Virus record (IMG/VR): IMGVR_UViG_3300020473_000010
Span: 186,001 to 250,000 of that record
Strand: one strand, 5' to 3'
DNA length: 64,000 nucleotides
Shown here: piece by piece, positions 48,355 through 64,000 of the stretch
Layout of the letters: every line of letters starts with the position of its first letter
Numbering within the stretch: position 1 is the first letter of the stretch
Translations under genes and position numbers: made by a program
The notes under the pieces: model-generated
What the model saw: the letters and a program-made list of their open reading frames with translations, nothing else
Databases searched by the model: none
Told to the model about the DNA's origin: nothing

Positions 48355-48627
48355 TTAAGTTAAATTACCTGTTCCAGTTCCCGATACAACGGTTGAAACT
48401 GGGCCACCTGAGTTACCACCGGTACCGCTTGCAGTTACTGACGTCATTACTGACGCTGAGGTAACATAAGCTTTGATTGCATCAGCAATTGCTAGAGCCA
48501 AAAGTGAATTAATCGAATCTGATGGTAAACCTTTCTTTACCGCGTTGTCTCGTGCATCTGCGAAAGCTTTTTCAATATCCGAAATTAGTTGTGGGTATGC
48601 TGCAGCTAATGACATATTATTCTCCAA
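48355..48627 (-). CDS. Small protein between spike and gp25 genes, possible spike-tip/baseplate accessory (probable start MSLAAAY at 48615)
   Basis: LALAIADAIKAYV...GGPV...GTGTG; occupies the position where PAAR/gp5.4-type genes usually sit. Confidence 0.45.
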   Translation of the reverse strand: MENNMSLAAAYPQLISDIEKAFADARDNAVKKGLPSDSINSLLALAIADAIKAYVTSASVMTSVTASGTGGNSGGPVSTVVSGTGTGNLT

Positions 48628-51186: not shown

Positions 51187-51472
51187 CTATTTGGTTCTCC
51201 TCGTTTTCTATTTTTGCAATTTCGTTTGCGACTCTGAGAATTGAATCTCTTGAATCCTTAATGTCATTTATAACTTGCCTAATTTGTGGAGAATCATAAA
51301 ATATTGGGATTTCTAAAATTTTTGATACACTAGAATAGCGATCATCTAGAATATCTAAACTTGTTTCTAATGAATCTGTAATTTTTAATATTATATTTGC
51401 AAATTTATAATTATAATATAACGAAACTATTAACGCTATAGAAATTATCGCTAATAACCAATTTATTATCAT
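51173..51472 (-). CDS. Small membrane-anchored hypothetical protein (99 aa)
   Basis: N-terminal hydrophobic helix followed by a coiled-coil-like region. Confidence 0.6.
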   Translation of the reverse strand: MIINWLLAIISIALIVSLYYNYKFANIILKITDSLETSLDILDDRYSSVSKILEIPIFYDSPQIRQVINDIKDSRDSILRVANEIAKIENEENQIDERP

Positions 51473-52620
51473 GTATGATCTCTTAAAAATTTATCGTATA
51501 ATTCTGATATAGCTTCCTGGGAATATTTTTGCCTTATTACTTTTCCTAATTTACTAGACCAGGTTTCCGGGATGGATGTTCCTTTTTTATAAAATTTATA
51601 AATCCTTTCGGATAAATGCCTAAAATCAATCTCTGCCCAAGAGGAACCTTGGATCCAGATATTGTTATCAACTCTTGAATCTGGTATATTTTTTAAATTA
51701 TATGAAACGGACAACCATTTACCTTTGTTTAAAAACTCGCAATGAGCTGACCAGTTAGTCGCAATAACTGGCAAATTACAAGCTGCGGCTTCTAGCATGG
51801 GGAGACCAAACCCTTCTCCTCTTGTACCGGAAAGTAATGCTTTAACTTTTTTGTTTTTATATAATCCCGAGATTTCACTCTCCGATAAGGCACCGTGAAT
51901 TAAATATACTTTTGGATATTGACCGTCTCTTACTTGGTTAATTAAATTAGATAAATTTCTTCTAGTAATCCTCCTATCAATGGCGCAATTTCTTCCGGAA
52001 TTTGTTTTTATTATTAAACCAACTTCTTTGTTGTCTTTAAAAGTATTACAGAAAGTTGCTATTGTATTATACGTATTTTTCCTGTCATCTTCCTGAGATC
52101 CAGTTAATTGTCCTAAAAGTAAAAAATTAAAATCTGTTTTAATTTCCGGCATAGAAAAATCATTATCGTTTAAGCACTCTGAAATAAAACTTTCCGGAAT
52201 AACTGAAATATTTTCAGATTCGGCACCTGAATTAACTAATACTTTTTTCGAAAATTCAGATGGAACGATAACATGATCCATGTTTTTGCAATTTTCTATC
52301 CATCCTGGATTGCATTTTGTTGCTTCTACTACAGCCGTGACTCCAAAATTCCGCTCTGCAAGATTAGGATCCCACTCATTTGGTAGTTGGATTTGAAAAG
52401 AAATATTTGGTTTAATAATTGGAGGAGCTGATCTTTCCATTATTTCTCCAATTAGGCCATTTAGGTCATCCGGGTTGCAATACCACGGAGTAATTCCCCA
52501 TGGGGTAACTGAAACTGAAATCAAATATTTTTTTTCTAATGCCCATTTAAAAATCTGTCTGGCATGTACACCATAGCCAGACTGAGTTAAAAGCGGGCCT
52601 CGGATATGAATATGTTTCAT
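51469..52620 (-). CDS. Glycosyltransferase, GT4-like (GT-B)
   Basis: SGYGVHAR; IVPSEFSK; RKN; TRGEGFGLPMLEAAACNLPVIATNWSAH. Confidence 0.9.
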   Translation of the reverse strand: MKHIHIRGPLLTQSGYGVHARQIFKWALEKKYLISVSVTPWGITPWYCNPDDLNGLIGEIMERSAPPIIKPNISFQIQLPNEWDPNLAERNFGVTAVVEATKCNPGWIENCKNMDHVIVPSEFSKKVLVNSGAESENISVIPESFISECLNDNDFSMPEIKTDFNFLLLGQLTGSQEDDRKNTYNTIATFCNTFKDNKEVGLIIKTNSGRNCAIDRRITRRNLSNLINQVRDGQYPKVYLIHGALSESEISGLYKNKKVKALLSGTRGEGFGLPMLEAAACNLPVIATNWSAHCEFLNKGKWLSVSYNLKNIPDSRVDNNIWIQGSSWAEIDFRHLSERIYKFYKKGTSIPETWSSKLGKVIRQKYSQEAISELYDKFLRDHT

Positions 52621-53873
52621 TATATTTCCTCTATTGAGATACGCTTATATTTAGTTTTCCAAGATTCCAAAGTTTCTAACATGGTATTATGCCATGCATC
52701 AACTGTGTTTTGGTGGTTAAATTCAGATTCAACATAATTTTTTGCCTTTTGACCTAAGGCTTTTCGGCCTTCGGCGCCCAGTTTATACATATCCCAAATT
52801 TTTTCGCTAATGGTTTCAACCGATGTATAATCTTCATAAATGTATGGAACATTTTGAGAACCAACTAAAGTTTTTAGTTCTATTGGAAGAGCAAAACCAT
52901 TTTCAGTATTATCTCTATGGTCAATAACCTGCCTTGTTTGTCCTCCAGTTTTTGGTGCGATTATGGGAGTTCCTACTTGCATAGCTTCCAATGTGGATAA
53001 ACCGAACCCTTCTGCGTAACTTATATTAATTGTAAAATCAGCAATATTATGCAATGTATTAACTACATCGAAACCTATTCTTTTATTGGAGAACACAACA
53101 TTGTCAATTAACCCAAGCATTTCTATCATAGAAAACAAATTTGGGCCTTCTTTATCTAATGGGTCAGTATGCATTAATAAAGTGGCGTTTTTGTGACCTT
53201 CTTCTTTTTCTAATCTTTCTAGAAAGATCTTCCAAGCCCACAATAAATCGCCCGGGCGCTTTCTTCTTGCGTTTCTATTGATCCAAAACCCTAAAAAATG
53301 ATCTTTGCGATCGGGTCCTAGAATATTTAATTTTTCTGTTTTAATTTTATCTTCTGATAATTGGAAAAATGTTTTGCCAGGAAGGCTATGGGGAATAAAT
53401 TTTGTTTTTTCTGGGTAGTGTTTTACTACTTGTTCGTATGTATGGTAAGAATGACAATTAATTAGGTCTACAGAATCATAGTAACCATTATTAAATTCCG
53501 GGTAAGGGGCATTATCCCAAACATGCCAATATACGATTGGACATATTTGATGGATTTCATCTTCCATTTCAAAAATATGAATATAAAATCTTGGATCAGT
53601 GAAAAGGAAAATGATATCTGGTTTTTCTGTTGCTAAAACAACACGAATCATTTCTCTTGTTCCAAATCCATCAATTGGCTTTATAATAAAATCATCATTT
53701 ACTTTTGCGACGGTATAGTCGTCATGCTTCATAGCGGCGCCAAGTTGGCGCACTGTCCAACAGCCTTTTTCAATTAAACCGTTTATTAAATGTCTAGACT
53801 GTACTCCAACACCGCTGGTGCTTAGAGCGTGGTCGGAAATCATCACAATCTTCTTTTTACCATCCGTTTCCAC
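52620..53873 (-). CDS. Glycosyltransferase, GT4-like (GT-B)
   Basis: SDH....SGVG; NRNARRKR; SYAEGFGLSTLEAMQVGTPII. Confidence 0.9.
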   Translation of the reverse strand: METDGKKKIVMISDHALSTSGVGVQSRHLINGLIEKGCWTVRQLGAAMKHDDYTVAKVNDDFIIKPIDGFGTREMIRVVLATEKPDIIFLFTDPRFYIHIFEMEDEIHQICPIVYWHVWDNAPYPEFNNGYYDSVDLINCHSYHTYEQVVKHYPEKTKFIPHSLPGKTFFQLSEDKIKTEKLNILGPDRKDHFLGFWINRNARRKRPGDLLWAWKIFLERLEKEEGHKNATLLMHTDPLDKEGPNLFSMIEMLGLIDNVVFSNKRIGFDVVNTLHNIADFTINISYAEGFGLSTLEAMQVGTPIIAPKTGGQTRQVIDHRDNTENGFALPIELKTLVGSQNVPYIYEDYTSVETISEKIWDMYKLGAEGRKALGQKAKNYVESEFNHQNTVDAWHNTMLETLESWKTKYKRISIEEI

Positions 53874-54720
53874 TACAATGCTCCGTATTTTTAAATGAAC
53901 AGAATTTACAACTGTTATAATTTTTTAAAGTAAATCCCTTTTTTACGTTTTTAATCATGCTTTCAACTAATTTGTCGGTTTTTTCAAGAAATTTTGGCCC
54001 AGTAGAAACTTTAAAGATTTCACATGTAGAACCTAAAGGAGCTCCGCGTTTTAAGAAAACGAAAGCTGTTTTGATATCTTTTAAGTCAACCTGAGATTTT
54101 TCAGACCAATATTTTTTGTAGAGCCCAACCTGAGCCAAGGATGAAAATTCTTTTTTCTTTTGATAATACCATCCATTTTTACCGGTAGTTTTCCAATCTA
54201 AAATCCAAAAGTTTACTTTGTTTGAAGTTTTGGATTTTGGCGTCATTATAACGCAATCTATAAATCCTTTAAATTTTAAATCGAAATTATTTATAGGCTG
54301 ATATAAATCGTCTTCTGCTTTTAAAATTTCCCAACCTGGAAATGTTTCATCCATGAACTTTGGAAAGTCTGATAAAATATTTTTAGAAGATTGGATCCAA
54401 TCATTTAAATACTCGTGGGTATATTTAGATCCAATTGTAGCTCTTGATTCTGTAATTTTCTTAATATATTCGTGTGAATCGTATTGTTTAAGTTGCCACC
54501 TTTGAGTAATTTTTTTTCCTACATTTTCAATTGAAATATCATTTCCGTTTAAATATTTCTCTATTTCTTCATGGATGATTGTTCCAAAATCAGCGTATGG
54601 ATTATCTTCATATGTTTCTATTTTGTCAACATACATTAGCTTATGCCTATATGAACACTCTTTCCAGGCTTTTAGTTCGGAATAAGATATATGCGGTTTA
54701 CCGGTTGGAAAATTACTCAT
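53857..54720 (-). CDS. PD-(D/E)XK exonuclease (AddB/Cas4/RecB-like) with a probable Fe-S Cys staple
   Basis: HISYS...EC; GTIIH; KGFID; LDWKT; C-terminal CKFC.....C. Confidence 0.85.
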   Translation of the reverse strand: MSNFPTGKPHISYSELKAWKECSYRHKLMYVDKIETYEDNPYADFGTIIHEEIEKYLNGNDISIENVGKKITQRWQLKQYDSHEYIKKITESRATIGSKYTHEYLNDWIQSSKNILSDFPKFMDETFPGWEILKAEDDLYQPINNFDLKFKGFIDCVIMTPKSKTSNKVNFWILDWKTTGKNGWYYQKKKEFSSLAQVGLYKKYWSEKSQVDLKDIKTAFVFLKRGAPLGSTCEIFKVSTGPKFLEKTDKLVESMIKNVKKGFTLKNYNSCKFCSFKNTEHCSGNGW

Positions 54721-54766
54721 TTTTTGTATACCTCTCTAAATAAAGATACTCCTAAGTTTAAAGAAG

Positions 54767-55789
54767 TTAAATTTCGTTTTTTGTATAGACAGAAGGATCA
54801 ATATTATGGTATTTTCCTCTGGCAATTTTGGTTTGAATATCTAGATCGCTTTGATACATGTCTTTAACCAAATCTTTAATATCGTATTTTGGATACCATT
54901 TTAATTTAGTTTTGGCTTTTTCAGGATTACCTAAAAGCAAAGGGACTTCATGAGGCCTAAATAGTCTTTTATCTTGCTTTACATATTTTTCAATTGATAA
55001 GCCAGCGTGTTGGAAAACTAATTCTAAAAATGTTTTCACAGAATAGGTTTTTCCAGTTGCTAAAACATAATCATCCGGGGTATCTTGCTGAAGCATTAAC
55101 CACATTCCCTGAACATAATCTTGAGCATGACCCCAATCCCGTTTTGCTTCGAGGTTTCCTAGATACAATTCTTTTTGAAGCCCTAGTTTTATTCTTGCTG
55201 CTGCAATAGTGATCTTTCTAGTTACAAATGTTTCTCCGCGGCGGGGCGACTCATGATTAAACAAGATTCCGGAACAAGCAAAAAGATTATATGCTTCTCG
55301 ATAATGCCTAATCATATTATGGCAAAATAGCTTTGCACATGCGTAAGGAGATGCCGGCATAAATTTTGTATTTTCATCTTGTGGGTATACAGGGTTGTCA
55401 CCATACATTTCTGAGCTTGAAGCTTGATAAAATTTAGCTTTTGGACAACAGATTCTCCAAGCTTCAAGTAATTTTAGTGTTCCCATAGCAATAGAATCTA
55501 CAGTTTCAACAGGGACTTCAAAACTAACCCTAACATGGCTTTGTGCTGCTAAGTTATATATTTCATCTGGTTTATATTTTAAAAGAAGTCGATGCATCCA
55601 AGTAGAATCATGCATAGAACCATAATGTAAAATAAAATTAGAATCCTCAAATAGTCTATCGATTCGATCAGTTGAAATAATGCTTGTTCTTCGCTTTATT
55701 CCTATAACTTTGTATCCTTTAGAAATTAGCAAATCTGCTAAATAACTTCCGTCTTGACCAGTGATCCCTGTAATTAATGCTGTTTTCAT
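54767..55789 (-). CDS. gmd: GDP-mannose 4,6-dehydratase
   Basis: ALITGITGQDGSYLA, YNLAAQSHVRVSF, YQASSSEMYG, SPYACAK, NHESPRRGETFVTRKIT, RDWGHA. Confidence 0.97.
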   Translation of the reverse strand: MKTALITGITGQDGSYLADLLISKGYKVIGIKRRTSIISTDRIDRLFEDSNFILHYGSMHDSTWMHRLLLKYKPDEIYNLAAQSHVRVSFEVPVETVDSIAMGTLKLLEAWRICCPKAKFYQASSSEMYGDNPVYPQDENTKFMPASPYACAKLFCHNMIRHYREAYNLFACSGILFNHESPRRGETFVTRKITIAAARIKLGLQKELYLGNLEAKRDWGHAQDYVQGMWLMLQQDTPDDYVLATGKTYSVKTFLELVFQHAGLSIEKYVKQDKRLFRPHEVPLLLGNPEKAKTKLKWYPKYDIKDLVKDMYQSDLDIQTKIARGKYHNIDPSVYTKNEI

Positions 55790-55833
55790 ATTTTATTTGT
55801 AGTGAAAGGTTTGTTGAAGTTTTGCCAATTCTA

Positions 55834-55862
55834 ATTTTATCTAGTCTATACCATTTGTACAA
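55834..55862 (-). promoter_or_regulatory. Sigma70-like promoter upstream of gmd
   Basis: TTGTAC (55862-55857), a 17-nt spacer and TAAAAT (55839-55834), in a 75-nt intergenic gap. Confidence 0.45.
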
Positions 55863-55864
55863 GA

Positions 55865-57013
55865 TTATAAAATATCTAAAATTGCTTGACATATGAATTT
55901 AATGTCCGAAGGCTTAAGTTTTTGATGACAAGGAAGGTAAAGTCCAAAATCATGAACCTTATCAGCATTAGGCAGGCTACTGAAAGAACCATATTTTTCT
56001 ATCCAAAATGGATGGCGAGCTATAGATCCGCAAATTAAAGGTCGGCATTCAACATTTAATCGATTTAGTTCTTTGACAATTTGCTCTTTCTTTTTATGTA
56101 TTAGGCCGAACGCCAAAGGGGATGGATTACAACCGGTTGATTTCTGGGTCCACACGTGGTTATCTAGATAGTCTTGGTATATTTTTAGGTTTTCTCTTCT
56201 TTTTTCAATATTTTTCGAAAGGTTATTTAATTGACGGATGCCTAAAAATGCATTTAAATCTGTTGACCTTATATTAAAACCCGGTTTGATAAAGAAGTAT
56301 AAAGAATTAAAATCATCTATGTTGTATTTCTCCGCATATTGTTTCTGAGAATTTGGGTCTAAATCACGTACCCAGCCATGAGAACGTAATATTAGGCACA
56401 AATCTCTAATTTCGGGATCATTTGTACATACCATTCCACCTTCAATAGTTGACATATGATGCCCATAATAATAACTAAAGGAAGACATTAATCCATATGT
56501 ACCTACTTTTTGATCCTGATAGGTGGCACCATGGGCTTCACAACAGTCCTCTAGCAGTATTACATTGTTATCTTTACAAATCTCGAGAATGGCTGACATA
56601 TTGTTGGCCCATCCTAAAACATGAACCAATATCACAGCTGCCGGACGATGTTCTTGGACTAGAGAAGAAAAATGGTGAATATTTAATCCCAAATCATTAG
56701 GGTCACAATCGCAAAGTATAGGTTCGTATCCAAGCTGAATAAAAGGTGCAACAGTTGTTGCCCAACTTACGGCTGGTACTATTATTTTTTTATTCTTTAA
56801 CCTCCCGGATTCAAGCAAGGCTGAAGCCATTAATAAATTAGCGCTGGAACCGGAATTAACAAAACAAGAATATAAAACGTTTTGCCATTGCGACCAATTT
56901 TTTTCAAATTCTTGAGTAAGATGTCCTTTAGTCAGTTTCGGATCTTGGTATAGCCACTCTATTAATGCCATTCGGTCTTTTGTGCCAATTGTATCATCAA
57001 CTAGTTTTATCAT
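55865..57013 (-). CDS. PLP-dependent GDP-4-keto-6-deoxymannose 3-dehydratase-like enzyme (ColD-type, DegT family)
   Basis: VNSGSSANL, EDCCEAHGA, and SFSYYYGHHMSTIEGG with His where the Schiff-base Lys normally sits. Start re-set to MIKLVDD (ATGA overlap with the GT11 stop). Confidence 0.8.
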   Translation of the reverse strand: MIKLVDDTIGTKDRMALIEWLYQDPKLTKGHLTQEFEKNWSQWQNVLYSCFVNSGSSANLLMASALLESGRLKNKKIIVPAVSWATTVAPFIQLGYEPILCDCDPNDLGLNIHHFSSLVQEHRPAAVILVHVLGWANNMSAILEICKDNNVILLEDCCEAHGATYQDQKVGTYGLMSSFSYYYGHHMSTIEGGMVCTNDPEIRDLCLILRSHGWVRDLDPNSQKQYAEKYNIDDFNSLYFFIKPGFNIRSTDLNAFLGIRQLNNLSKNIEKRRENLKIYQDYLDNHVWTQKSTGCNPSPLAFGLIHKKKEQIVKELNRLNVECRPLICGSIARHPFWIEKYGSFSSLPNADKVHDFGLYLPCHQKLKPSDIKFICQAILDIL

Positions 57014-57783
57014 ACTCTCTCCCATCGGTCCGGAATTACATCTTGATCTGGTGTATCGTTTGCAAACCAAATTTTTGGAGCTATAATTTTACTATTAGAT
57101 TCCTCTCCAAGCCAAGCTGCCCACCAAGAAAAAGACGAATTAGCAATGATTTTGTTTTTAAACGAAGTCATGAAATAAAGATCTAAAACATCACTAATAG
57201 AATTCATATATAAGTGGTTATTCCCAAAATGCTCTCGGCACCATTGGACATCATCGCTAAAAAACACAAATTTAGCATTATTGAATTTCCGCATCGCCAA
57301 ATCGTAATAATTCGAATCTTCAGCTAAATTTTTATGTATGTCAGCCAATTTAATATAGTCGCCTCTTCTAACATGAACAGCAACCATATTTTCTTCGAGT
57401 TGAAAATTTCCATAGTAATAATTTAATTGCGATTTTACCCAATTAGTGGGGGCAAATAAATTTTTTATTTTTTCAGCATTATGAGCAAAATGTTTTTCAG
57501 ATTGAAAGTATCCTTGTAAAAACATATTTTCGGAATATGGAATTTTGTGATAGTTAAAATTGGGTTCAATATATAGTTTTCTTGCCCAACTTAATTCATT
57601 CATATATTTTATTTTTGAAAATACAGATGAAGCATATAATGTTCTTTCTTCATGAGAAGGACATGCTCCAATGACATTCAAGGGAAACACTGCTATATCG
57701 GCATTGTCGATTGCTAAAGATTCTACAGTAGCAATAATAAACATTTGATTACCTAACCGACCTCTTATTTCCGCAGATATCAT
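57010..57783 (-). CDS. Alpha-1,2-fucosyl/colitosyltransferase (GT11)
   Basis: GRLGNQMF, VHVRRGDY, FSDDVQWC and IANSSFSWWAAWL. Start re-set to MISAEI (ATGA overlap). Confidence 0.93.
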   Translation of the reverse strand: MISAEIRGRLGNQMFIIATVESLAIDNADIAVFPLNVIGACPSHEERTLYASSVFSKIKYMNELSWARKLYIEPNFNYHKIPYSENMFLQGYFQSEKHFAHNAEKIKNLFAPTNWVKSQLNYYYGNFQLEENMVAVHVRRGDYIKLADIHKNLAEDSNYYDLAMRKFNNAKFVFFSDDVQWCREHFGNNHLYMNSISDVLDLYFMTSFKNKIIANSSFSWWAAWLGEESNSKIIAPKIWFANDTPDQDVIPDRWERV

Positions 57784-58709
57784 AAGATACCCCTTATGTG
57801 GGGGTAACTTTCTATAAACCATTCACATGTTTTTTCAAGACCAGAACGTAAATTAGTATAGGATTTATTATATCCTAATTTTTTTAAAGCTTGAGTTGAT
57901 GAGGGCTTTCGGTGCTGGCCTATAGGTTTTGTTGTATCCCAAAAAATCATACCTGGGGGGAACTCAAATATTTCGCAGATTATACTTGCTACGTGTTTAA
58001 TTGAATATTCAACACAGTTTCCTATATTGATCGGAAGGGAACCATCATAATTTTCTAAAAGCCAGATTAGTGTTTCAGCAATATCAAGAGAATATGTAAA
58101 TTCCCTTAAAGATGAACCATCCCCCCATAAATTTACAATAGAATTATTTTGTTTTCCTTCCCATATTTTCCTTATCAAGGCTGGAATAACATGGCCATTT
58201 TCTAAGTGAAAATTGTCATTAAACCCATATATGTTATTTGGCACAGCTGTAATATATTTCAACCCGTATTGGCTCCGTAACGCGCGAGAATGAACTTCTA
58301 GCATACGTTTAGCATAAGCATACCCATAGTTGCTTTGGTGAGGTTCTCCGTTGTGTATCTGGTCTTCTGTAAGCGGGTATTTTACTTTGTCTGGATATAT
58401 ACATGTTGACAATAAAGAGACGACTTTTTGAATACCTTCTTCTTTTGCGGCATTTAATAAATTTGTATTAATTAAAATATTTTCATGGAAAAAATCAGCT
58501 ATGTAATCAGAATTTCCTTTAACGCCACCAACTTTAGCAGCTAAATGGATAACAGCATCCGGATTGTGGTCTACAAACATTTTGTGGGCATAATATAGTT
58601 TTGTTAAGTCATATTCACTTGATCCAACTAAAACTAAATTGTGGGATGTATTTAAATTTCGAAAAGCAGAACCTACCATCCCAGTTCCACCAGTAATTAA
58701 TATTTTCAT
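57780..58709 (-). CDS. fcl: GDP-L-fucose synthase / ColC-like epimerase-reductase
   Basis: ITGGTGMVGS, HLAAKVGG, STCIYP, YAYAKR, NIYG..DNF...HVIPALI, WGDGSSLREF. Confidence 0.9.
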   Translation of the reverse strand: MKILITGGTGMVGSAFRNLNTSHNLVLVGSSEYDLTKLYYAHKMFVDHNPDAVIHLAAKVGGVKGNSDYIADFFHENILINTNLLNAAKEEGIQKVVSLLSTCIYPDKVKYPLTEDQIHNGEPHQSNYGYAYAKRMLEVHSRALRSQYGLKYITAVPNNIYGFNDNFHLENGHVIPALIRKIWEGKQNNSIVNLWGDGSSLREFTYSLDIAETLIWLLENYDGSLPINIGNCVEYSIKHVASIICEIFEFPPGMIFWDTTKPIGQHRKPSSTQALKKLGYNKSYTNLRSGLEKTCEWFIESYPHIRGIL

Positions 58710-58711
58710 TT

Positions 58712-59353
58712 TTACCCCTTATTAAAATATATTTCATCACACCCGGTAGTACAAAATAAATTAAAGTTTTTAGATATCATGAAATCTTGTATTTCATTGC
58801 CATAATAATTGTTTTCAACGGTTATTACTTTGATAGTGTAATTTTCGAAATTAATACTTTTTAAGATTTCTAATTCGTTGCCTTCAATATCCAGAGAAAG
58901 GATATCGATATTTGAGGGACATAAAGAAAATAACTCTTTTACAGTAACTGTTTCTACATCAATCCATTCTGGGATATTTTTAATCAATCCCTGATGTTCT
59001 TCGAACAGGATTCTTTCAATGTGATTTGGATGATATTTTGATGGAATTCCTGCTAATCCTTGGCCCCAGGCTCCGGTTGGGAATGGTTGGAATTTAGTTT
59101 CGAAACTTAACTCGCTGTTGCTAACTACAGCTTTTTGAATTATTTCCCAATCCCGATTGGTTTTTAGTATGGGGATCTGAGAAGGGTTTGGTTCAATTAA
59201 TAAGCCATCCCAACCCAAGTCTTCAAAAAATTTAGAATTACTACAATGAATTCCATCCATAGCCCCAATATCTAGGAAAAATCCTTTGGTTTGAGATTTA
59301 AAAAATCTTTCAAATATAATTTCATCTTGCTGGTATTGGCTATAATATTTCAT
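58712..59353 (-). CDS. FkbM-family methyltransferase
   Basis: YSQYQQD, FFLDIGAMDG..SNS, LIEPNP, LSLDIEGNEL. Start re-set to MKYYSQ (ATGA overlap). Confidence 0.9.
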   Translation of the reverse strand: MKYYSQYQQDEIIFERFFKSQTKGFFLDIGAMDGIHCSNSKFFEDLGWDGLLIEPNPSQIPILKTNRDWEIIQKAVVSNSELSFETKFQPFPTGAWGQGLAGIPSKYHPNHIERILFEEHQGLIKNIPEWIDVETVTVKELFSLCPSNIDILSLDIEGNELEILKSINFENYTIKVITVENNYYGNEIQDFMISKNFNLFCTTGCDEIYFNKG

Positions 59354-60012
59354 GAATAATCCTTGAAACAACTAAAATTTCTTACATCCGGATATTTCCA
59401 TGAACCTCCACAATCTTCGTTGGTTTCTGGAAGAGAGAGGAAGAGCTTGATACCATATGCAGCTTGTTCCGGAGGCATATACATATTCCACCCAAGCATA
59501 TCGATATTATCATCATCATATTTTACTGTAATATCTCGACCTTCGTATCTTGCCTTTTTAAACCACTGGTATGCACTATAATCATTTGTTAAAATTATTC
59601 CACCTTTACCTATAGGCAATGTTTTCTTTATATGGAAAGATACACACTGATAAGTACCTTCTATATACATCCCTTTTGTAAACCTGGTTGCTCCATCGAT
59701 AATAGGGTATGGATCTAGACGATATGTACCAGACCATTCGATATTATTAAAATTTGGGTTGCAACCTGCGTGAATAATTGCCTGAGGTACTGAAACATAT
59801 GTCTTTGCCGGAATTGTTATTTTGCCTGAAGCATTTAAATATTTCATGCACAAAAATAAACCATTGGTGCAATTATCTACCGCTACAGCATATTTGGAAC
59901 CAGCATATTCGGCTATCATTTTTTCAAATATATCGACGATATCCCATGGGTCATTGATTTCATAGCCTAAAGGTTTAATAATTTTTATAATTTCTTCTAT
60001 AGAACAATACAT
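59350..60012 (-). CDS. Short DegT/DnrJ/EryC1/StrS-family PLP enzyme (220 aa)
   Basis: FEK.IAEY.G.KYAVAVDNCT.GL; SFHIKKTLPIGKGG with Lys retained; GWNMYM. Much shorter than a full-length DegT. Confidence 0.8.
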   Translation of the reverse strand: MYCSIEEIIKIIKPLGYEINDPWDIVDIFEKMIAEYAGSKYAVAVDNCTNGLFLCMKYLNASGKITIPAKTYVSVPQAIIHAGCNPNFNNIEWSGTYRLDPYPIIDGATRFTKGMYIEGTYQCVSFHIKKTLPIGKGGIILTNDYSAYQWFKKARYEGRDITVKYDDDNIDMLGWNMYMPPEQAAYGIKLFLSLPETNEDCGGSWKYPDVRNFSCFKDYS

Positions 60013-60686
60013 TAAATCTCCAACATTCTAGAATAATATTCGCCAATTATGAATTTTTGATTAGTGGTTGCTGTTTGTTTGTCATATAGTGGATTATAAC
60101 ATTTGTTTGGCAGAATTCTAAAATCTAAGCTAACTCGAGTTTTTTCTGTTAAATTAGTTTTGTTAAAATGCCGGCAGCGATTTCCGTTCCAAACCATAAA
60201 TTGTGATGGTACCATGTTTACTGGTTTGTAATCACCTAAATTAGGAACGCTTTCTATCCATATTGTGCTAGTATCGAACATTTCGGTTAGAGGTATTAGG
60301 ATATTAATTTCTCCCAGTGGGTGTTTATGGTGTTCATCTGAATCACAATGGATTGTTGTTACAGCTTTTGCTTTGGGGTATTGTATCCGAAACGAAGGTA
60401 AGGTTTGATATATTAGACTTTCTTCTTCTAAGAATAATGGGAAAATTTTATTCCTTATAAAGCTATGATAAACATATTCAAAATCTTTCCAGTTATTATT
60501 TAGTTTTTTATAAAAAATTTCATGAAAAATACTGTGAGTATCATTTCCTAATCCGGCTATACCATCATCGGCTGAATATAGACTTTGCAAATTTTCGTGT
60601 AATAATTCTAATTCGCTAACACCAAACAACTGTTTTAATAAAGCGGAAAAATTATATTGATTTTTATCGAAATAATAATGTTTCAT
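60012..60686 (-). CDS. 2OG-Fe(II) oxygenase-like protein (StrG-like)
   Basis: YQ..PSFRI; HCD (HxD); EIN..IPLT; H.N..N.T..TRVSLDFR (distal His and RxS). Confidence 0.75.
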   Translation of the reverse strand: MKHYYFDKNQYNFSALLKQLFGVSELELLHENLQSLYSADDGIAGLGNDTHSIFHEIFYKKLNNNWKDFEYVYHSFIRNKIFPLFLEEESLIYQTLPSFRIQYPKAKAVTTIHCDSDEHHKHPLGEINILIPLTEMFDTSTIWIESVPNLGDYKPVNMVPSQFMVWNGNRCRHFNKTNLTEKTRVSLDFRILPNKCYNPLYDKQTATTNQKFIIGEYYSRMLEI

Positions 60687-60689
60687 AAT

Positions 60690-61403
60690 TTATTTTTTTA
60701 CTAATAGAGGATCGAAAGTTTTTTTGATATCTTCTAAAAAGATATTTTTAAAAGCTGATCTTTGAGCAGTGACTAATTCTTTTTTGGTAATTTCCTCTAT
60801 GTTTAATGCCGCAGGATCATGAGGCGTTAATCTTTTCGTTAATTTTTTATTACAGTGTTTATAAATTTCATCGAATCTTTTAGGGTTCCATGGACGGTTT
60901 AAAAATTTTATGCAGCTTTGAAATGTTTGGGCACCATTGTCTCTTATTTCTTCATATTTTATGAAATGCAAATTAGTAATATTTGATTGGTTATTAAGAT
61001 AAAATTGCAAATGCTTATAATATTCCAACTTATATTTTTCGAAAGCTTCAGCAAGATCTATAGATTTTTGACCATCCCAATTTTCCGGAATATTGCCTTC
61101 ATATTTCATTATAGAGAAAATTGTATCAGCTGGATTTCTATAAAGATATATTGCGTTTTTTAACCCAAAAACAGGACCTTCAGATGGATGTGGTTTCGCG
61201 ATATAACGGTGGTGAATATGGAAACCCCATATATTTGATGGCCGGGGATTAAAAAATGACTGTACAATCGAGGGTTCATTTAAATAGGCTTCCATCAAAA
61301 TCCTAAACCAATGGCTTCCTGTACGAGGATATGATATCAATCTAGGAAAATCTAGGTTATCAAATATTTTTAGTTCTTCTTTTTTGTAGCTTATGTCAAA
61401 CAT
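60690..61403 (-). CDS. Sulfotransferase (PAPS-dependent)
   Basis: 5'-PSB-like SYPRTGSHW, 3'-PB YRNPADTIFS, and IKYEE. Confidence 0.85.
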   Translation of the reverse strand: MFDISYKKEELKIFDNLDFPRLISYPRTGSHWFRILMEAYLNEPSIVQSFFNPRPSNIWGFHIHHRYIAKPHPSEGPVFGLKNAIYLYRNPADTIFSIMKYEGNIPENWDGQKSIDLAEAFEKYKLEYYKHLQFYLNNQSNITNLHFIKYEEIRDNGAQTFQSCIKFLNRPWNPKRFDEIYKHCNKKLTKRLTPHDPAALNIEEITKKELVTAQRSAFKNIFLEDIKKTFDPLLVKK

Positions 61404-62003
61404 TTACCAGATCTCCCTTGTTACTTTTTTTGAAAGCATGTGGCCTTCAATTGTTTTTTCATCTAAACTCGAGAGATCAAGAAATGCATGGAGTGATTCA
61501 AATTGAGTATTATAAAACCCTTTTTTCCTTAAGTCTTCTTCTAATGGATATTTAGCTGAATTTAAATTATTTCTGCTTAAGAAATAACCTCCTTCTACAA
61601 TGTTGTTAGCTGCCCAATTTTGAATATTATACTTTAATTCCGGGGTTAGGGGAAATGAACCGATATCGTTGTGAATGAACGCGATTGGAAAATCAGGTAA
61701 TTTTAAAATATCTGAACAGTCTTGAACAATAACTCGTGGATGATTTGTAGGGTTAGCAATATCAAAACCAACGCATCTTTCATATCCAAAATGACCACAA
61801 AGCAAATCAAAACTAATACATCGATTTGTGCCCATTACAACTATAGAACCAAAATCCGGAATATCTCTAATTTTTGTTATTATATGATCAAAAATTTTAT
61901 ACGCATAATAGTTTTTTCCATAACCATGTACATCTTGATTATGGTTATGTTCATCTGTATTTGAGAACCAGAATTTTTCACTATAGTATTTTTTTTCAGA
62001 CAT
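61404..62003 (-). CDS. Hypothetical protein, possible class I SAM-methyltransferase fold
   Basis: VVMGT...VGFDI...FIHNDIG...VEGGYFL. Start re-set to MSEKKYY. Confidence 0.45.
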   Translation of the reverse strand: MSEKKYYSEKFWFSNTDEHNHNQDVHGYGKNYYAYKIFDHIITKIRDIPDFGSIVVMGTNRCISFDLLCGHFGYERCVGFDIANPTNHPRVIVQDCSDILKLPDFPIAFIHNDIGSFPLTPELKYNIQNWAANNIVEGGYFLSRNNLNSAKYPLEEDLRKKGFYNTQFESLHAFLDLSSLDEKTIEGHMLSKKVTREIW

Positions 62004-62883
62004 TTGGGTTTCTCTTTTTAATTGCCCGATAAATAAATTCATCAAAATCATAATACTGTAAAGCTTTTTGGTAATTAATTTGAAGAGAAGATGAAAACTT
62101 TTCGTATAAGTCGTTGTTTAAATTTGGAATAATATTCTCTAATTCCTCTATTGTGTTGAAAATTATTATTGAATCCGGGTCAAAAAATTCTTTAATATTT
62201 GGGGCGCCCCAATATACCGGGATTGTTCTACATGCAAAGCAGTCTAATATTTTTTCAGTAAAATAATTTTCAGCTCGGTTATTTTCTATCACTATTGAAA
62301 ATCTATAATCGTTTAAAGCATCTGATTTATATTCTAGGGGTTTTTTAGTTCCTCTACCATAACAATCAAAACCTTTAAGTTTTGCTGCAATTTCATGACG
62401 TAATTTATGACCAGCTATATCTTTTTTATCAGAAAAAATGTGAGAAATATTTTTTGTTTTAACAATAGATTTTTGATATATTGATTTTGTGTCGACAAAT
62501 AATCCATCGGCTGGAATAAATTCACATTTTTCAGGATAGGTTTCTAACAGGTATTTATCCCAGGTTAAAATTAGATCGAAATTACTAATGTTAGATTCTA
62601 AAACCCTATATATTTCTGGATCATATGCTCTGGGCTCCATGGTCCATGCAATTTTATAAAATTTCGAAGGAAACTGATCAGCATAGCCAAAAAGCTTGTC
62701 TGAAAATATTATTGTTTCATAATTGTCAATTAATTTTATTGCTTCCGGGTCTAGACAGAGAGAACCATCTTCAACAAAAGTTAATTTGTTGTATTTTATG
62801 TGTTTGGTTTTTCTACCTTTTTCCAGAGCATCTGCCCAACATTCCGCGTGGCTGATGTTTATATCACAAAAATTAACAATCAT
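61996..62883 (-). CDS. Alpha-1,3/4-fucosyltransferase-like (GT10)
   Basis: K..AL.DYRFSIVIEN....NYFTEKILDCF...TIPVYWG is the GT10 alpha-1,3 motif. Confidence 0.88.
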   Translation of the reverse strand: MIVNFCDINISHAECWADALEKGRKTKHIKYNKLTFVEDGSLCLDPEAIKLIDNYETIIFSDKLFGYADQFPSKFYKIAWTMEPRAYDPEIYRVLESNISNFDLILTWDKYLLETYPEKCEFIPADGLFVDTKSIYQKSIVKTKNISHIFSDKKDIAGHKLRHEIAAKLKGFDCYGRGTKKPLEYKSDALNDYRFSIVIENNRAENYFTEKILDCFACRTIPVYWGAPNIKEFFDPDSIIIFNTIEELENIIPNLNNDLYEKFSSSLQINYQKALQYYDFDEFIYRAIKKRNPNV

Positions 62884-64000
62884 TTAATAGCCCAATTTTC
62901 CCAAATAAATGGGAAAAAATAGGTAAGTTCATGGGTTTTCTCCAGATCACCTCTAATTTTTTCATATTTTTGGATTGAATCATCATCAATAGGGTGGAAT
63001 TGGACTTGTAGATTTTTAACTTTGTTAATATCACCAGATGATATCATTGCAGGAAGCACTTCATATTCTGATCCTTCAATATTCATTTTTAACAAATCGA
63101 TGGTGTTGAAATTTTCTAGTGCTTTTGTCACAGAAACAAGGCTTATATTTCCATTAGGATCATCGACAACCCGAGTTGCAAGATCATCTTCTATCATTTT
63201 TACTTTTCTTGTTGTTCCACCAATGCCCAAATTGTATACTTTAATGTTTGGTTTATCATTAAATTTTTCTTTTAGTAAATTTGAGAACTTTTCAAATGGT
63301 TCATAGACATGAATTTCGCAATTATATTTGTCATTAATTTGTTGGGCCCACTCTCCTTTAAATCCACCGACATCTATTACAGTAGAATCTGAATTTAAAT
63401 CATAGTTGAGCCTAAGTGTATTATCGCCATCCTTTTTTACCCATTCTTTGACAGCTGTTCCTTGAATTTCTTTAAGAAATTGAAGTGGGGTTTTTGGAGG
63501 AGGCCCTGGGAACCTTTCGTATTTTTTCCTTTTCCTTACTAGCATTTCAACACGATGCTGATCCTCTTGGCGGATTTGATCATCGCTAATAGGGTTAAAT
63601 CTGTTATAACAATAAACTATATTTGGAACAAAAAGAGTTCTTTCCCGAGACATTTCTAACATTGGCAGCATAAAAGCTACATCCCAACCTACGGAAAAAT
63701 ATTTTCCATCTTCATCTCTAAGATCTTCATCTTTGATTGCATGCCATAATTTTGACCTAAATGTCCTAAGGTGGCTTGTAACAAATTTGTACTCTCGAAA
63801 CGCGTTTTTCTGGATAACTTCCGGTGGGAGAGGAAAACAATTTGACATTCCACCAGTGGGGTGGTGAACGTGATTACCATAGGTTAGCATAGGATTATGC
63901 TTATCATAAACATCGGCGATTATGGCAAGAGAATAGTCTGTAAACAAGAAGTCATCTCCATCAATAACCATTAACACAGCTTCTGGATCGTCTTTTGTTT
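62880..64000 (-). CDS. GT2-like glycosyltransferase fused to an FkbM methyltransferase; 5' end lies beyond the window
   Basis: The frame is open to the window end (TKDDPEAVLMVIDGDDFL). GT-A DxD, SHLRTF and D.AFM.PMLEM motifs are followed by VIDVGGFKG, YEP and LLKMNIEGSEY. Confidence 0.85.
   Translation of the reverse strand, partial: TKDDPEAVLMVIDGDDFLFTDYSLAIIADVYDKHNPMLTYGNHVHHPTGGMSNCFPLPPEVIQKNAFREYKFVTSHLRTFRSKLWHAIKDEDLRDEDGKYFSVGWDVAFMLPMLEMSRERTLFVPNIVYCYNRFNPISDDQIRQEDQHRVEMLVRKRKKYERFPGPPPKTPLQFLKEIQGTAVKEWVKKDGDNTLRLNYDLNSDSTVIDVGGFKGEWAQQINDKYNCEIHVYEPFEKFSNLLKEKFNDKPNIKVYNLGIGGTTRKVKMIEDDLATRVVDDPNGNISLVSVTKALENFNTIDLLKMNIEGSEYEVLPAMISSGDINKVKNLQVQFHPIDDDSIQKYEKIRGDLEKTHELTYFFPFIWENWAIK

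What the first reader, a model, noticed from the sequence alone, without database searches (positions are those of the whole stretch)
51469..64000. Glycan build-and-decorate cluster directly upstream of the late sigma factor and baseplate genes: possible virion glycosylation
Seen: at least five glycosyltransferases (GT2, GT10, GT11, two GT4-like), two FkbM methyltransferase domains, a sulfotransferase, a 2OG-Fe(II) oxygenase and two PLP enzymes are co-oriented. The last GT overlaps the genes leading into the late sigma factor and spike. No flippase, polymerase or exporter is visible. GT11 plus GT10 is the enzyme pair that builds Lewis-type doubly fucosylated epitopes. The downstream structural proteins are very Ser/Thr/Asn-rich. 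Inference: a sulfated, methylated deoxysugar glycan is added in the cytoplasm to virion proteins. Host-surface conversion or DNA modification are alternatives.
Basis: partly seen in the sequence, partly recalled or inferred. Interest (0 to 1): 0.62.

Follow-up and report, generated by a model that had tools for sequence, protein, structure and literature searches.

The report
Hypervariable glycan island of marine jumbo phage
A 289-kb marine phage carries a 21-kb block of soluble sugar-building enzymes, wedged between a fibre-like gene and its baseplate genes, that most likely coats a phage component (probably virion proteins) with a methylated, sulfated deoxysugar glycan that differs from one related phage to the next.

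Summary
The window holds about 12.5 kb of a roughly 21-kb, 23-gene island (genome 237,469-258,694) with about 15 glycosyltransferase domains, two FkbM methyltransferases, two sulfotransferases, a 2OG oxygenase and a GDP-fucose/GDP-colitose pathway (GMD, ColD-type dehydratase, Fcl-like). No island protein has two or more predicted membrane-spanning segments. The genome, estimated 96% complete, has no priming transferase, flippase, polymerase or exporter.

Relatives give the new insight. In all informative loci among 80 related IMG/VR loci, an invariant core (a GT-B+GT-A fusion, a PD-(D/E)XK nuclease and two GT4 genes) lies between a giant fibre-like gene and the sigma-like and baseplate genes. 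It flanks an insertion hotspot holding 0 to about 26 kb of different sugar cargo. The nuclease-GT4-GT4 trio recurs in cultured Flavobacterium, Microcystis and Rhodothermus phages.

The phage also encodes a dCMP hydroxymethylase, so DNA glycosylation is a live rival. However, complete relatives keep the trio without that enzyme. A late-type promoter motif precedes one island operon. The acceptor remains unproven. Virion protein is my leading guess (about 0.4), ahead of host envelope and DNA.

The parts
47797..48312 (-). gp25-like baseplate wedge gene (context; first clearly structural gene downstream)
   Evidence: PF04965 E 4.9e-6, phrog_43
48331..48338 (-). ATATTTAT late-type promoter-like motif, 18 nt before the gp25-like start
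   Evidence: The motif is in 12 of 127 upstream regions against 2 for its reverse complement. It also precedes the tape measure and adaptor genes, and a one-base variant (ATATTTAA) precedes the sheath gene.
48617..50107 (-).
   Evidence: no Pfam or PHROG hit; present in 78 of 78 loci
50461..51186 (-). sigma-like protein (241 aa, pI 9.2); candidate gp55-type late sigma factor
   Evidence: phrog_234 E 8.8e-4; hhalign to T4 gp55 E 0.0096 with a shared LHxFD...AxxY block; no PDB profile hit
51173..51472 (-). 99-aa acidic ORF overlapping GT4a and the sigma gene; possible gp33-like co-activator (inference only)
   Evidence: pI 4.5; conserved in 78 of 78 loci
51469..52620 (-). GT4a, invariant core glycosyltransferase (GT-B, EX7E motif kept)
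   Evidence: PF00534 2e-11; 80 of 80 loci, median 47% identity; alignment A5
52620..53873 (-). GT4b, invariant core glycosyltransferase, the most conserved gene of the region
   Evidence: PF00534 1e-12; 469 IMG/VR relatives, best 80 at 59% identity or more; AF2 model pLDDT 82.7, top Foldseek hit chlorovirus B736L 3OY2 at 8.8e-17
53857..54720 (-). PD-(D/E)XK nuclease, invariant partner of the GT4 pair
   Evidence: PF12705 3e-19; 52 of 52 loci; the same trio occurs in phages immuto and Mel-JY01, and RM378 has the GT4b homologue preceded by a gene annotated 'similar to DNA polymerase I'
54740..54747 (-). one-mismatch copy (ATCTTTAT) of the late-type motif, 19 nt before the nuclease start; weak evidence
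   Evidence: one-mismatch copies are common by chance
54767..55789 (-). GDP-mannose 4,6-dehydratase; first gene of the variable cargo
   Evidence: TIGR01472 454.7 bits, above its 415 cut-off; GMD-like hits upstream of the nuclease in 42 of 52 relatives, median 64% identity overall; best cellular homologues are 62% or less and scattered over phyla
55865..57070 (-). ColD-type PMP-dependent GDP-4-keto-6-deoxymannose 3-dehydratase (not an aminotransferase)
   Evidence: PDB 2GMS/3GR9 ColD at 1.8e-62 against perosamine synthase at 1e-30; His-His in place of the catalytic Lys in the alignment
57010..57822 (-). GT11 (alpha-1,2-fucosyl/colitosyl-transferase family)
   Evidence: PF01531 8e-27
57780..58709 (-). 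GDP-L-fucose synthase-like epimerase/reductase (Fcl or ColC)
   Evidence: NF047922 253 bits, below its 500 cut-off
58712..59371 (-). FkbM-family methyltransferase
   Evidence: PF05050 7e-14
59350..60012 (-). 220-aa protein with only the N-terminal part of the DegT fold; conserved at this length in relatives, so not a fresh pseudogene
   Evidence: PF01041 6e-22 over profile positions 26-115; 59.5% identical 220-aa homologue in G001; 10 loci
60012..60686 (-). 2OG-Fe(II) oxygenase (carbohydrate-cluster type)
   Evidence: TIGR04324 2.4e-7, below cut-off; invariant H113-x-D115, H173, R184-x-S186
60690..61403 (-). sulfotransferase (PAPS-dependent family); the phage has no APS kinase
   Evidence: PF00685 2.5e-15; no PF01583 hit in the genome
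61404..62051 (-). 215-aa ORF of unknown function, conserved in a few relatives' islands
   Evidence: only phrog_22194, unknown function; homologues in G001 and 4 loci
61996..62883 (-). GT10-like (alpha-1,3-fucosyltransferase family) glycosyltransferase
   Evidence: PF00852 6.9e-10
62880..64000 (-). C-terminal 373 codons of a 458-aa GT2 + FkbM methyltransferase fusion. The gene, and the island, run on beyond the window to genome 258,694.
   Evidence: L004:880-2256: PF00535 1e-22 plus PF05050. The rest of the island is in L004 2243-10694.

Best explanation
The finding is the proximal 12.5 kb of a roughly 21-kb glycan-biosynthesis island in a 289-kb marine myovirus.

**Architecture (shown).** A large uncultured phage lineage shares an invariant gene order. 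A giant fibre-like gene comes first, then a 655-aa GT-B+GT-A fusion, a PD-(D/E)XK nuclease, GT4b and GT4a. These are followed by a small acidic ORF, the sigma-like gene and the baseplate genes. Between the fusion GT and the nuclease lies an insertion hotspot. In different relatives it holds nothing, or up to about 26 kb of differing nucleotide-sugar pathways, glycosyltransferases, methyltransferases and sulfotransferases.

**Cargo in this phage (partly shown, partly inferred).**
- Shown by homology: GMD, a ColD-type 3-dehydratase and an Fcl/ColC-like reductase.
- Inferred: these convert GDP-mannose into GDP-L-fucose and/or GDP-L-colitose.
- Inferred: GT11, GT10 and about ten further GT domains assemble an oligo- or polysaccharide.
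- Inferred: FkbM enzymes O-methylate it, a 2OG oxygenase modifies it, and two sulfotransferases sulfate it using host PAPS.

**Site of assembly.** All island enzymes are soluble, and the genome has no lipid-carrier priming enzyme, flippase, polymerase or exporter (shown). The glycan is therefore built in the cytoplasm on an acceptor available there (inferred).

**Acceptor (inferred, not shown).** I think phage virion protein is most likely. Candidates are the adjoining giant fibre-like protein or other tail or head surface proteins. The invariant GTs would lay a conserved linkage or core, and the variable cargo would give each phage its own outer glycan, like a serotype.
For: **Content and extent.**

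**Soluble enzymes, no export.**

**Not a chimera.**
- Contigs from two further marine samples tile the most foreign segment and both of its junctions with 0 differences.
- The phage GMD is closer to other phage copies (64-71%) than to any cellular one (62% or less).

**Conserved core and variable cargo.**
- Downstream synteny holds in 78 of 78 loci and the nuclease in 52 of 52; cargo genes are patchy.
- Minimal islands have the fusion GT directly next to the nuclease, preceded by a 1703-aa homologue of the fibre-like gene (L083, L093).
- G001 and G004 carry different sugar pathways: radical-SAM/B12 and UDPG-DH in one; NeuB, CMP-transferase, a GT9 heptosyltransferase, SIS and PfkB in the other.

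**The GT core behaves like a vertically inherited phage gene.** GT4b is 31% identical to its homologue in Flavobacterium phage immuto, the same divergence as baseplate gp6. The GT4b homologue lies beside a PD-(D/E)XK nuclease and a second GT in immuto and Mel-JY01, and recurs in RM378 (hosts Flavobacterium, Microcystis, Rhodothermus). This points to a conserved, probably phage-encoded acceptor.

**The fibre-like neighbour.** The N-terminal 100 aa are conserved and the rest is variable. It is the second most Ser/Thr/Asn-rich large protein.

**The fusion GT.** The N-terminal GT-B domain scores Z 19. The C-terminal GT-A domain is closest to the peptide S-glycosyltransferases SunS/ThuS (Foldseek 7.9e-9, Z 16.1). 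GT4b's top structural neighbour is a chlorovirus GT.

**Timing.**
- An orientation-specific ATATTTAT motif precedes the tape measure, adaptor and gp25 genes, and the GT34-to-sulfotransferase operon of the island. A one-base variant (ATATTTAA) precedes the sheath gene.
- The motif class found upstream of the DNA polymerase III alpha operon and other genes outside the structural module has no copy in the island.
Against: - No glycoprotein evidence of any kind exists.
- No structural protein has the extreme Ser/Thr tracts of known heavily O-glycosylated substrates.
- The minus-strand part of the island has no recognisable late motif.
- That part runs without a break into the sigma-like gene, which should be expressed before late genes.
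- In RM378 and Mel-JY01 the GT4 pair lies among replication genes.
- In T4, a DNA glucosyltransferase lies between a recombination nuclease and gene 55. That is an uncomfortable echo of this synteny.
- The phage has a dCMP hydroxymethylase, and every recognisable GT in the genome lies in the island.
- GT4-fold matches are the same templates hit by proven DNA arabinosyltransferases (PMC13326640), so the fold says nothing about the acceptor.
- The late motif is not conserved in distant relatives.
Confidence: 0.42

Rival explanations
1. Host-envelope remodelling. The island's enzymes act at the inner face of the host membrane on the host's own undecaprenyl-linked intermediates. The altered O-antigen, capsule or protein O-glycan is then exported by host flippases, transporters and ligases. 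The benefit could be blocking superinfection or stopping progeny from sticking to infected cells and debris.
For: - The enzyme families (GMD, ColD, Fcl, GT2, GT4, GT11, FkbM) are those of bacterial O-antigen and capsule loci.
- Peripheral GTs of such pathways also lack TM helices, so one search does not exclude this.
- Cargo varies between relatives as host serotype loci do.
- From my own knowledge: cyanophage LPS gene clusters, chlorovirus hyaluronan synthesis and prophage O-antigen conversion are precedents.
Against: - The phage encodes no priming transferase, flippase, polymerase, ligase or ABC exporter. Every membrane step would have to be borrowed and would have to accept a foreign glycan.
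- The GT core is conserved across phages of Bacteroidota, Cyanobacteria and Rhodothermus, whose envelope acceptors differ.
- The core evolves like a phage core gene, not like a patchy auxiliary gene.
- GMD is not a recent host capture.
- One island operon carries the structural-gene promoter motif.
Confidence: 0.27
2. DNA hypermodification. The phage replaces cytosine with 5-hydroxymethylcytosine, and some island GTs (first candidates: the GT4 pair beside the nuclease) glycosylate it. The cargo might then extend or decorate the DNA glycan to evade restriction.
For: - A thymidylate-synthase homologue at genome 118,643-119,524 matches T4 dCMP hydroxymethylase best (9e-21 against 3e-6 for ThyA). 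It keeps the catalytic Cys and the Asp that specifies cytosine, and it has Asp (not Asn) at the position that marks 5-hydroxycytosine synthases (criterion from PMC13326640).
- It sits with a dCMP deaminase, a dUTPase and an SDR.
- Relative G001 has a T4-like enzyme at 239 bits.
- All Pfam GT2/GT4 hits of the genome lie in the island.
- Proven DNA arabinosyltransferases are GT4-like and come as adjacent pairs (PMC13326640).
- DNA glycans of up to three sugars, including heptose and ulosonic acids, are known (bioRxiv 10.1101/2023.12.21.572611).
- T4 has a nuclease - a-gt - gene 55 arrangement.
Against: - The GT core does not track the hydroxymethylase. G017 (284 kb, CheckV 100%) has GT4b at 63% identity but no ThyA-family hit. 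Mel-JY01 has none, and immuto has a canonical ThyA at 284 bits.
- No Tet/JBP hit was found in any of these genomes, though the control for that search was silent.
- The hydroxymethylase lies about 120 kb from the island, whereas such pathways usually cluster.
- About 15 GT domains plus methylation and sulfation far exceed any known DNA glycan.
- The island has none of the promoter motifs that precede the polymerase operon.
- GT4b is acidic (pI 5.9).
- There is no sequence similarity to T4 a-gt.
Confidence: 0.12
3. The invariant GTs make a soluble small-molecule glycoside or storage/osmolyte sugar in the infected cell, and the cargo is unrelated metabolic baggage.
For: The nearest structural neighbours of GT4b and of the N-terminal domain of the fusion GT include enzymes with small-molecule acceptors: BshA, MshA, sucrose-phosphate synthase and tetrahydrobiopterin glucosyltransferase.
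Against: - Ranking within the GT4 fold does not predict the acceptor.
- Sugar cargo always nucleates next to this core, in immuto and Mel-JY01 as well, which argues for one shared product.
- Fifteen GT domains imply a polymer or a complex oligosaccharide.
Confidence: 0.08
4. The cluster is a mis-assembled host fragment.
For: GC content is slightly lower (0.31-0.35) than in the rest of the window, and the gene families look bacterial.
Against: - Phage genes flank the cluster on both sides of one contig.
- The same architecture occurs in dozens of independent contigs.
- Contigs from four marine runs cover the most foreign segment and its junctions with zero differences.
Confidence: 0.01

Closest known systems
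Giant-virus glycan machinery (chlorovirus PBCV-1 capsid glycans; Mimivirus/Megavirinae fibril glycan clusters)
   Same: - Virus-encoded, soluble, cytoplasmic GTs together with the virus's own nucleotide-sugar pathway (GMD plus reductase).
- Methyltransferase domains fused to GT domains.
- Clade-specific cargo.
- GT4b's best structural match is a chlorovirus GT (3OY2).
The biology of these systems is from my own knowledge.
   Different: - This is a tailed bacteriophage.
- It includes sulfotransferases and a colitose-type dehydratase.
- An invariant GT core flanks an insertion hotspot.
- No glycan has been observed.
Mycobacteriophage virion glycosylation (Freeman et al. 2023, cited in PMC12619734)
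   Same: Phage-encoded GTs thought to decorate capsid and tail proteins in the cytoplasm, with a methyltransferase present in some clusters.
   Different: Those systems have 2-4 GTs and use host sugars. Here there are about 15 GT domains with the phage's own deoxysugar pathway, sulfation and lineage-wide hypervariability. The acceptor is unknown.
Bacterial O-antigen/capsule loci with a GDP-colitose pathway (E. coli O55/O111 type)
   Same: GMD, a ColD-type dehydratase (215 bits to E. coli ColD), an Fcl/ColC-like reductase and a GT11-family transferase, plus GT2/GT4 enzymes. Conserved flanks enclose a variable centre.
   Different: No priming phosphoglycosyltransferase, Wzx/Wzy, ABC transporter or ligase anywhere in the genome.
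Phage DNA glycosylation pathways (T4 a-gt/b-gt; RB69/DLP3 arabinosylation; 5hmC glycan clusters of Pyle et al.)
   Same: A dCMP hydroxymethylase is present in the genome. The GTs are GT-B/GT4-like and occur as an adjacent pair. T4 shows a similar nuclease-GT-sigma neighbourhood.
   Different: The GTs are not next to the hydroxymethylase and are retained in relatives that lack it. The scale and chemistry (sulfate, methyl, about 15 GT domains) have no precedent for DNA.
'Moraphages' (PMC12619734), aquatic jumbo phages with four core GT orthogroups
   Same: Genome size, aquatic origin, several core glycosyltransferases, a core sigma factor and a glutamine-synthetase-like gene.
   Different: No HSP70/DnaK, which the paper reports in all moraphages. 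The published genomes could not be compared directly. The paper does not describe the island architecture.

Membership tests
GDP-L-colitose biosynthesis (GMD / ColD / ColC) | GDP-mannose 4,6-dehydratase | tested here: met
   TIGR01472 454.7 bits, above its 415 cut-off
GDP-L-colitose biosynthesis (GMD / ColD / ColC) | PMP-dependent 3-dehydratase with His replacing the aminotransferase Lys | tested here: met
   Best PDB hits are ColD 2GMS/3GR9 at 1.8e-62. The alignment shows GHH opposite ColD SHH.
GDP-L-colitose biosynthesis (GMD / ColD / ColC) | ColC-type epimerase/reductase as distinct from GDP-fucose synthase | tested here: inconclusive
   Fcl model scores 253 bits, below its 500 cut-off. No model separates ColC from Fcl.
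Wzx/Wzy- or ABC-dependent surface polysaccharide locus | Initiating phosphoglycosyltransferase | tested here: not met
   No PF02397 hit in the genome. No polytopic membrane protein that could be WecA-like.
Wzx/Wzy- or ABC-dependent surface polysaccharide locus | Flippase, polymerase, ligase or ABC-2 permease | tested here: not met
   The only ORFs with two or more hydrophobic segments of relevance are a weak PHO4-like match and the tape measure.
Phage DNA-glycosylation gene cluster | Enzyme that makes a hydroxylated or hydroxymethylated pyrimidine | tested here: met
   dCMP hydroxymethylase homologue with the catalytic Cys and both Asp residues kept
Phage DNA-glycosylation gene cluster | GT clustered with, and co-inherited with, that enzyme | tested here: not met
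   About 120 kb apart. G017, Mel-JY01 and immuto keep the GT core without a hydroxymethylase.
Virus-encoded virion glycosylation system | Soluble viral GTs encoded beside structural genes | tested here: met
Virus-encoded virion glycosylation system | Late expression | tested here: inconclusive
   The late-type motif precedes only the GT34 operon. The nuclease gene has a one-mismatch copy. The rest of the island has none.
Virus-encoded virion glycosylation system | Glycan covalently attached to virion proteins | not testable with these tools
   Needs virions
GtfA/GtfB-type serine-rich-repeat protein glycosylation | Adjacent GT4-like pair plus variable accessory GTs | tested here: met
   GT4a and GT4b are distant paralogues (hhalign 2.5e-7) with variable cargo.
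GtfA/GtfB-type serine-rich-repeat protein glycosylation | Substrate with long Ser-rich repeats | tested here: not met
   The richest 40-aa windows reach 50% Ser+Thr or less, and there are no repeats.
T4 gp55-type late sigma factor | Significant similarity to gp55 | tested here: inconclusive
   phrog_234 E 8.8e-4; hhalign E 0.0096, probability 4%; no PDB hit
Moraphage lineage (PMC12619734) | DnaK/heat-shock genes in all members | tested here: not met
   No PF00012 hit

The most novel reading that the evidence does not exclude
The nuclease-GT4b-GT4a(-fusion GT) module may be an ancient, vertically inherited virion-glycosylation system. It would be shared by a very large group of aquatic myoviruses, from Rhodothermus, Flavobacterium and Microcystis phages to marine jumbo phages. 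In the jumbo lineage it would have become an insertion hotspot where phages swap whole sugar pathways (fucose/colitose, nonulosonic acids, heptoses, sulfate, methyl). Each phage would then wear its own 'serotype' of cytoplasmically built glycan on its fibres. That would be a bacteriophage counterpart of the Mimivirus fibril glycocalyx.
Probability: 0.3. Interest if true: 0.8.

Novelty: new variant of a known kind. Interest (0 to 1): 0.62.

Why it matters
Virus-built glycans are well documented for giant eukaryotic viruses but only for a few mycobacteriophages among phages. This case offers three things.

- It shows a widespread ocean phage lineage (469 related stretches in IMG/VR) devoting up to about 7-9% of its genome to a glycan island that varies like a serotype locus around an invariant enzyme core.
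- If the glycan sits on virions, it would affect adsorption, grazing, aggregation and antibody or lectin recognition of abundant marine phages. It would also reveal soluble protein-glycosylating enzymes with unusual chemistry (colitose, O-methyl, sulfate).
- If the glycan sits on DNA or on the host envelope, that is equally informative for restriction evasion or superinfection exclusion.

Cultured phages (immuto, Mel-JY01, RM378) carry the same GT4b homologue in comparable contexts, so the question can be tested directly.

Tried and rejected
- Megablast of the cluster against GenBank phages found nothing.
- Sigma-70 promoter and intrinsic terminator scans of the island gave counts equal to shuffles and were uninformative.
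- A profile of the sigma-like protein against PDB sequences gave no real hit.
- hhalign of GT4a and GT4b against T4 alpha-glucosyltransferase showed no similarity.
- The ATATTTAT motif is not conserved upstream of gp25 or the GT genes in the 80 relatives. It is kept only in the closest relative, so timing cannot be generalised. Its plain count in the window is not above chance; only its placement and orientation are.
- No run on record as RNA holds the stretch, so there is no expression evidence.
- The closest cellular GMDs are scattered over many phyla, so they give no host inference.
- Moraphage membership could not be settled.
- Pfam found nothing in the giant structural proteins.
- Composition: there are no SRRP-like Ser tracts.
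- I did not run a complex prediction, because I do not claim a specific binding pair.
- I did not use the large protein searches, because the family scans and locus searches answered the questions.
- Only genetic code 11 was used. Read laying was given 6,000 letters.

Full report
**What the window is.** The window is bases 186,001-250,000 of a single 288,697-bp IMG/VR virus record, estimated 96% complete. Everything in the finding is on the minus strand. Downstream in the direction of transcription lies a myovirus structural module. It contains a gp25-like and a gp6-like baseplate wedge gene and a row of very large ORFs of 1,100-2,000 aa. Further along the genome are the tail sheath, tape measure, adaptor and major head genes. 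The nearest named phages are Microcystis phage Mel-JY01, Flavobacterium phage immuto and a 484-kb uncultured phage. All share about 30% identity in gp6.

**Checking the observation.**
- two GT4 genes, plus GT11 and GT10;
- a GT2 fused to an FkbM methyltransferase, and a second FkbM;
- a Sulfotransfer_1 protein;
- two DegT-family proteins;
- a 2OG-Fe(II) oxygenase.

The oxygenase's family match is weak, but its HxD...H...RxS triad is invariant in three homologues.

- A bona fide GDP-mannose 4,6-dehydratase, above the equivalog cut-off.
- A GDP-fucose-synthase-like reductase.
- A PD-(D/E)XK nuclease in the middle of the block.
- The cluster does not stop at the window edge.

Fetching the next 20 kb showed that the last ORF is a 458-aa GT2+FkbM fusion. 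After it come a GT47-like gene, a GT2 and a 655-aa GT. A divergently transcribed plus-strand operon follows, with GT34, GT32, GT47, two GT2 and a Sulfotransfer_4. The island ends at a 1,709-aa ORF. It therefore spans about 21 kb (genome 237,469-258,694) and 23 genes.

**The sugar pathway.** The full-length DegT protein is not an aminotransferase.
- Its best solved relatives are E. coli ColD (1.8e-62), far ahead of perosamine synthases (1e-30).
- It has His-His where aminotransferases have the catalytic Lys.
- With GMD and the Fcl/ColC-like reductase, this is the GDP-L-colitose route, possibly alongside GDP-L-fucose.

GT11 and GT10 are the families that transfer such sugars. The 'Lewis epitope' reading is therefore not supported as stated.

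The 220-aa DegT fragment is conserved at that length in relatives, so it is a real if enigmatic protein. There is no APS kinase, so the sulfotransferases depend on host PAPS.

**No membrane machinery.**
- A hydropathy scan of all 373 ORFs found no island protein with two or more membrane segments.
- The only polytopic candidates in the genome are a weak, below-cut-off PHO4-like (phosphate-transporter) match at the contig end and the tape measure.
- There is no Bac_transf priming enzyme.
- All Pfam GT2 and GT4 hits of the genome lie inside the island.

**Not an artefact.**
- Contigs from four marine metagenome runs, two of them samples that are not the likely source, cover the most foreign part of the island with zero differences. 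That part is the plus-strand operon together with both of its junctions.
- The GMD is closer to other phage copies (64-71%) than to any of 599 cellular homologues (62% or less, scattered over phyla).

**The main new result: a conserved core with variable cargo.** I searched IMG/VR first with gp6 and then with a GT4b alignment. GT4b has 469 related stretches, and the best 80 are all at least 59% identical.
- In every locus with enough flank, the order is the same. It runs nuclease, GT4b, GT4a, the 99-aa ORF, the sigma-like gene, the 118-aa ORF, the 496-aa ORF, gp25, gp6. This holds downstream in 78 of 78 loci, and the nuclease is present in 52 of 52.
- Upstream of the nuclease the content varies. 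GMD-like genes occur in 42 of 52 loci, Fcl in 33, ColD-like in 14, GT11 in 11, GT10 in 7 and sulfotransferase in 3.
- The 655-aa GT is the far boundary.
- In the smallest versions (L083, L093) the 655-aa GT sits directly next to the nuclease. In L083 it is preceded by a 1,703-aa homologue of the 1,709-aa ORF.
- Other relatives hold 6 to 26 kb of different cargo. G001 has radical-SAM/B12 enzymes, UDP-glucose dehydrogenase and Sulfotransfer_2. G004 has NeuB, a CMP-transferase, SIS and PfkB enzymes and a GT9 heptosyltransferase.

The island is thus an insertion hotspot between invariant glycosyltransferases.

The 1,709-aa neighbour shares only its first 100 residues with its counterparts. That is the usual pattern of a fibre with a conserved anchor and a variable distal part. 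It is also the second most Ser/Thr/Asn-rich large protein.

**The core enzymes.**
- GT4a and GT4b both keep the EX7E motif and are distant paralogues.
- The GT4b model (pLDDT 82.7) is closest to chlorovirus GT B736L, then to MshA, BshA, HepE and sucrose-phosphate synthase.
- The 655-aa protein (pLDDT 80.3) is a fusion. Its compact N-terminal GT-B domain scores Z about 19. Its C-terminal GT-A domain has the glycocin peptide S-glycosyltransferases SunS/ThuS as best matches. This is a hint, not proof, of a protein acceptor.

**Deeper ancestry.** GT4b homologues (23-32% identical) occur in cultured phages.
- In Flavobacterium phage immuto the order is nuclease, a small ORF, GT, GT. A small sugar cargo follows (GT2, two WecE-like genes, a methyltransferase and a mannosyltransferase).
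- In Microcystis phage Mel-JY01 the order is nuclease, GuaB, GT, a hypothetical ORF. A GT-A gene, a methyltransferase and another GT follow.
- In Rhodothermus phage RM378 the GT follows a gene annotated 'similar to DNA polymerase I', lies among replication genes and has no cargo.

GT4b has diverged about as much as baseplate gp6, so it behaves as a vertically inherited core gene. A conserved acceptor across hosts from three phyla is more easily a phage molecule than a host one.

**The DNA rival.** Far from the island, at 118.6-119.5 kb, is a thymidylate-synthase homologue whose best solved relative is T4 dCMP hydroxymethylase.
- It keeps the catalytic Cys and the cytosine-specifying Asp.
- It has Asp rather than Asn at the site that marks 5-hydroxycytosine synthases (PMC13326640).
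- G001 has a T4-like enzyme at 239 bits.

This phage therefore probably has 5hmC DNA, and some island GT might glycosylate it. Proven DNA arabinosyltransferases hit the same GT4 templates (PMC13326640). In T4 itself, a-gt lies between the 46/47 nuclease genes and gene 55.

Against this as the core function:
- G017 (284 kb, CheckV 100%) keeps GT4b at 63% identity but has no ThyA-family hit.
- Mel-JY01 has none, and immuto has a canonical ThyA.
- No Tet/JBP hit was found in any of these genomes, although that search's control was silent.
- Fifteen GT domains with methylation and sulfation are far beyond any known DNA glycan.

**Timing.** Two promoter-like motif classes emerged.
- ATATTTAT lies roughly 0-70 nt before starts (about 20-30 nt in most cases). 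It is in 12 of 127 upstream regions, against 2 for its reverse complement and a mean of 2.9 for same-composition permutations.
- It precedes the tape measure, adaptor, gp25 and fibre-module genes, and also the GT34-to-sulfotransferase operon. The sheath gene has a one-base variant (ATATTTAA).
- GTGTAGA-N14-GTTAAATTAYATATGT has 13 sites. These lie upstream of the DNA polymerase III alpha operon and other genes outside the structural module. None is in the island.
- The minus-strand part of the island has no clear promoter. It runs gap-free into the sigma-like gene, which by T4 logic should be made before late genes.

Timing therefore leans late for part of the island but is unresolved for the core.

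**The sigma identification.** It is weak (phrog_234 at 8.8e-4; hhalign to gp55 at E 0.0096).

**Verdict.** I regard the architecture and the enzymology as established. Cytoplasmic assembly without dedicated export is a strong inference. The acceptor is open. My estimates are virion protein about 0.4-0.45, host envelope about 0.27, DNA about 0.12 (perhaps for a subset of GTs in this subclade), and small molecule about 0.08. The moraphage paper (PMC12619734) noted four core GT orthogroups in a possibly related lineage but did not describe this island. Membership of that lineage is unsettled here.

Noticed in passing
outside the window: genome 115,000-123,200 (L005 6862-15165): A nucleotide-metabolism module. 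It holds a dCMP deaminase, a DHH phosphoesterase, a cupin-like ORF, a 331-aa SDR epimerase/dehydratase, a dUTPase, a DUF6378 protein, a divergent dCMP hydroxymethylase and a DnaE-type polymerase. It implies 5hmC DNA, and possibly a DNA-sugar pathway of its own (SDR plus cupin).
   Followed up: partly
whole genome; window examples at 8614, 21033, 26170 and 48331 (minus strand): Two promoter-like motif classes. ATATTTAT lies before structural genes. GTGTAGA-N14-GTTAAATTAYATATGT lies before genes in the 14-156 kb and 283-285 kb regions, outside the structural module and the island. All 10 ATATTTAT copies in the window are on the coding strand.
   Followed up: partly
T4 genome NC_000866 35.4-40.2 kb (L065): T4 has recombination nuclease 47/46, then a-gt, then gene 55 as neighbours. 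This echoes the nuclease - GT4 pair - sigma-like order here. No sequence similarity between the GTs was found.
   Followed up: yes
L004 16520-17842 (genome 264,520-265,842): A PIN + PhoH fusion protein lies just beyond the 1,709-aa fibre-like ORF.
   Followed up: no
genome 416-1354, 129,030-129,689 and 272,341-273,513: Auxiliary genes: a weak PHO4-like (phosphate-transporter) match at the contig end, a glutamine-synthetase-like gene, and a DUF444 (YeaH/SpoVR-associated) protein preceded by the late-type motif.
   Followed up: no
genome 171,934-173,898: The major head protein is 654 aa. The recognisable capsid fold occupies only the C-terminal 250 residues, leaving a roughly 390-aa N-terminal extension of unknown role. 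A nearby 106-aa ORF (169,981-170,301) starts with a Thr/Ser/Lys-rich tract.
   Followed up: no
genome about 68.7 kb, 77.9 kb and 288.6 kb: Intergenic sequences that look like tRNA genes (T-arm GGTTCGAATCC). They were not scanned with ARAGORN.
   Followed up: no
window 59350-60012: A 220-aa protein keeps only the N-terminal third of the DegT fold. It is conserved at that length at 54-60% identity in relatives, so it may be a repurposed domain rather than a pseudogene.
   Followed up: partly
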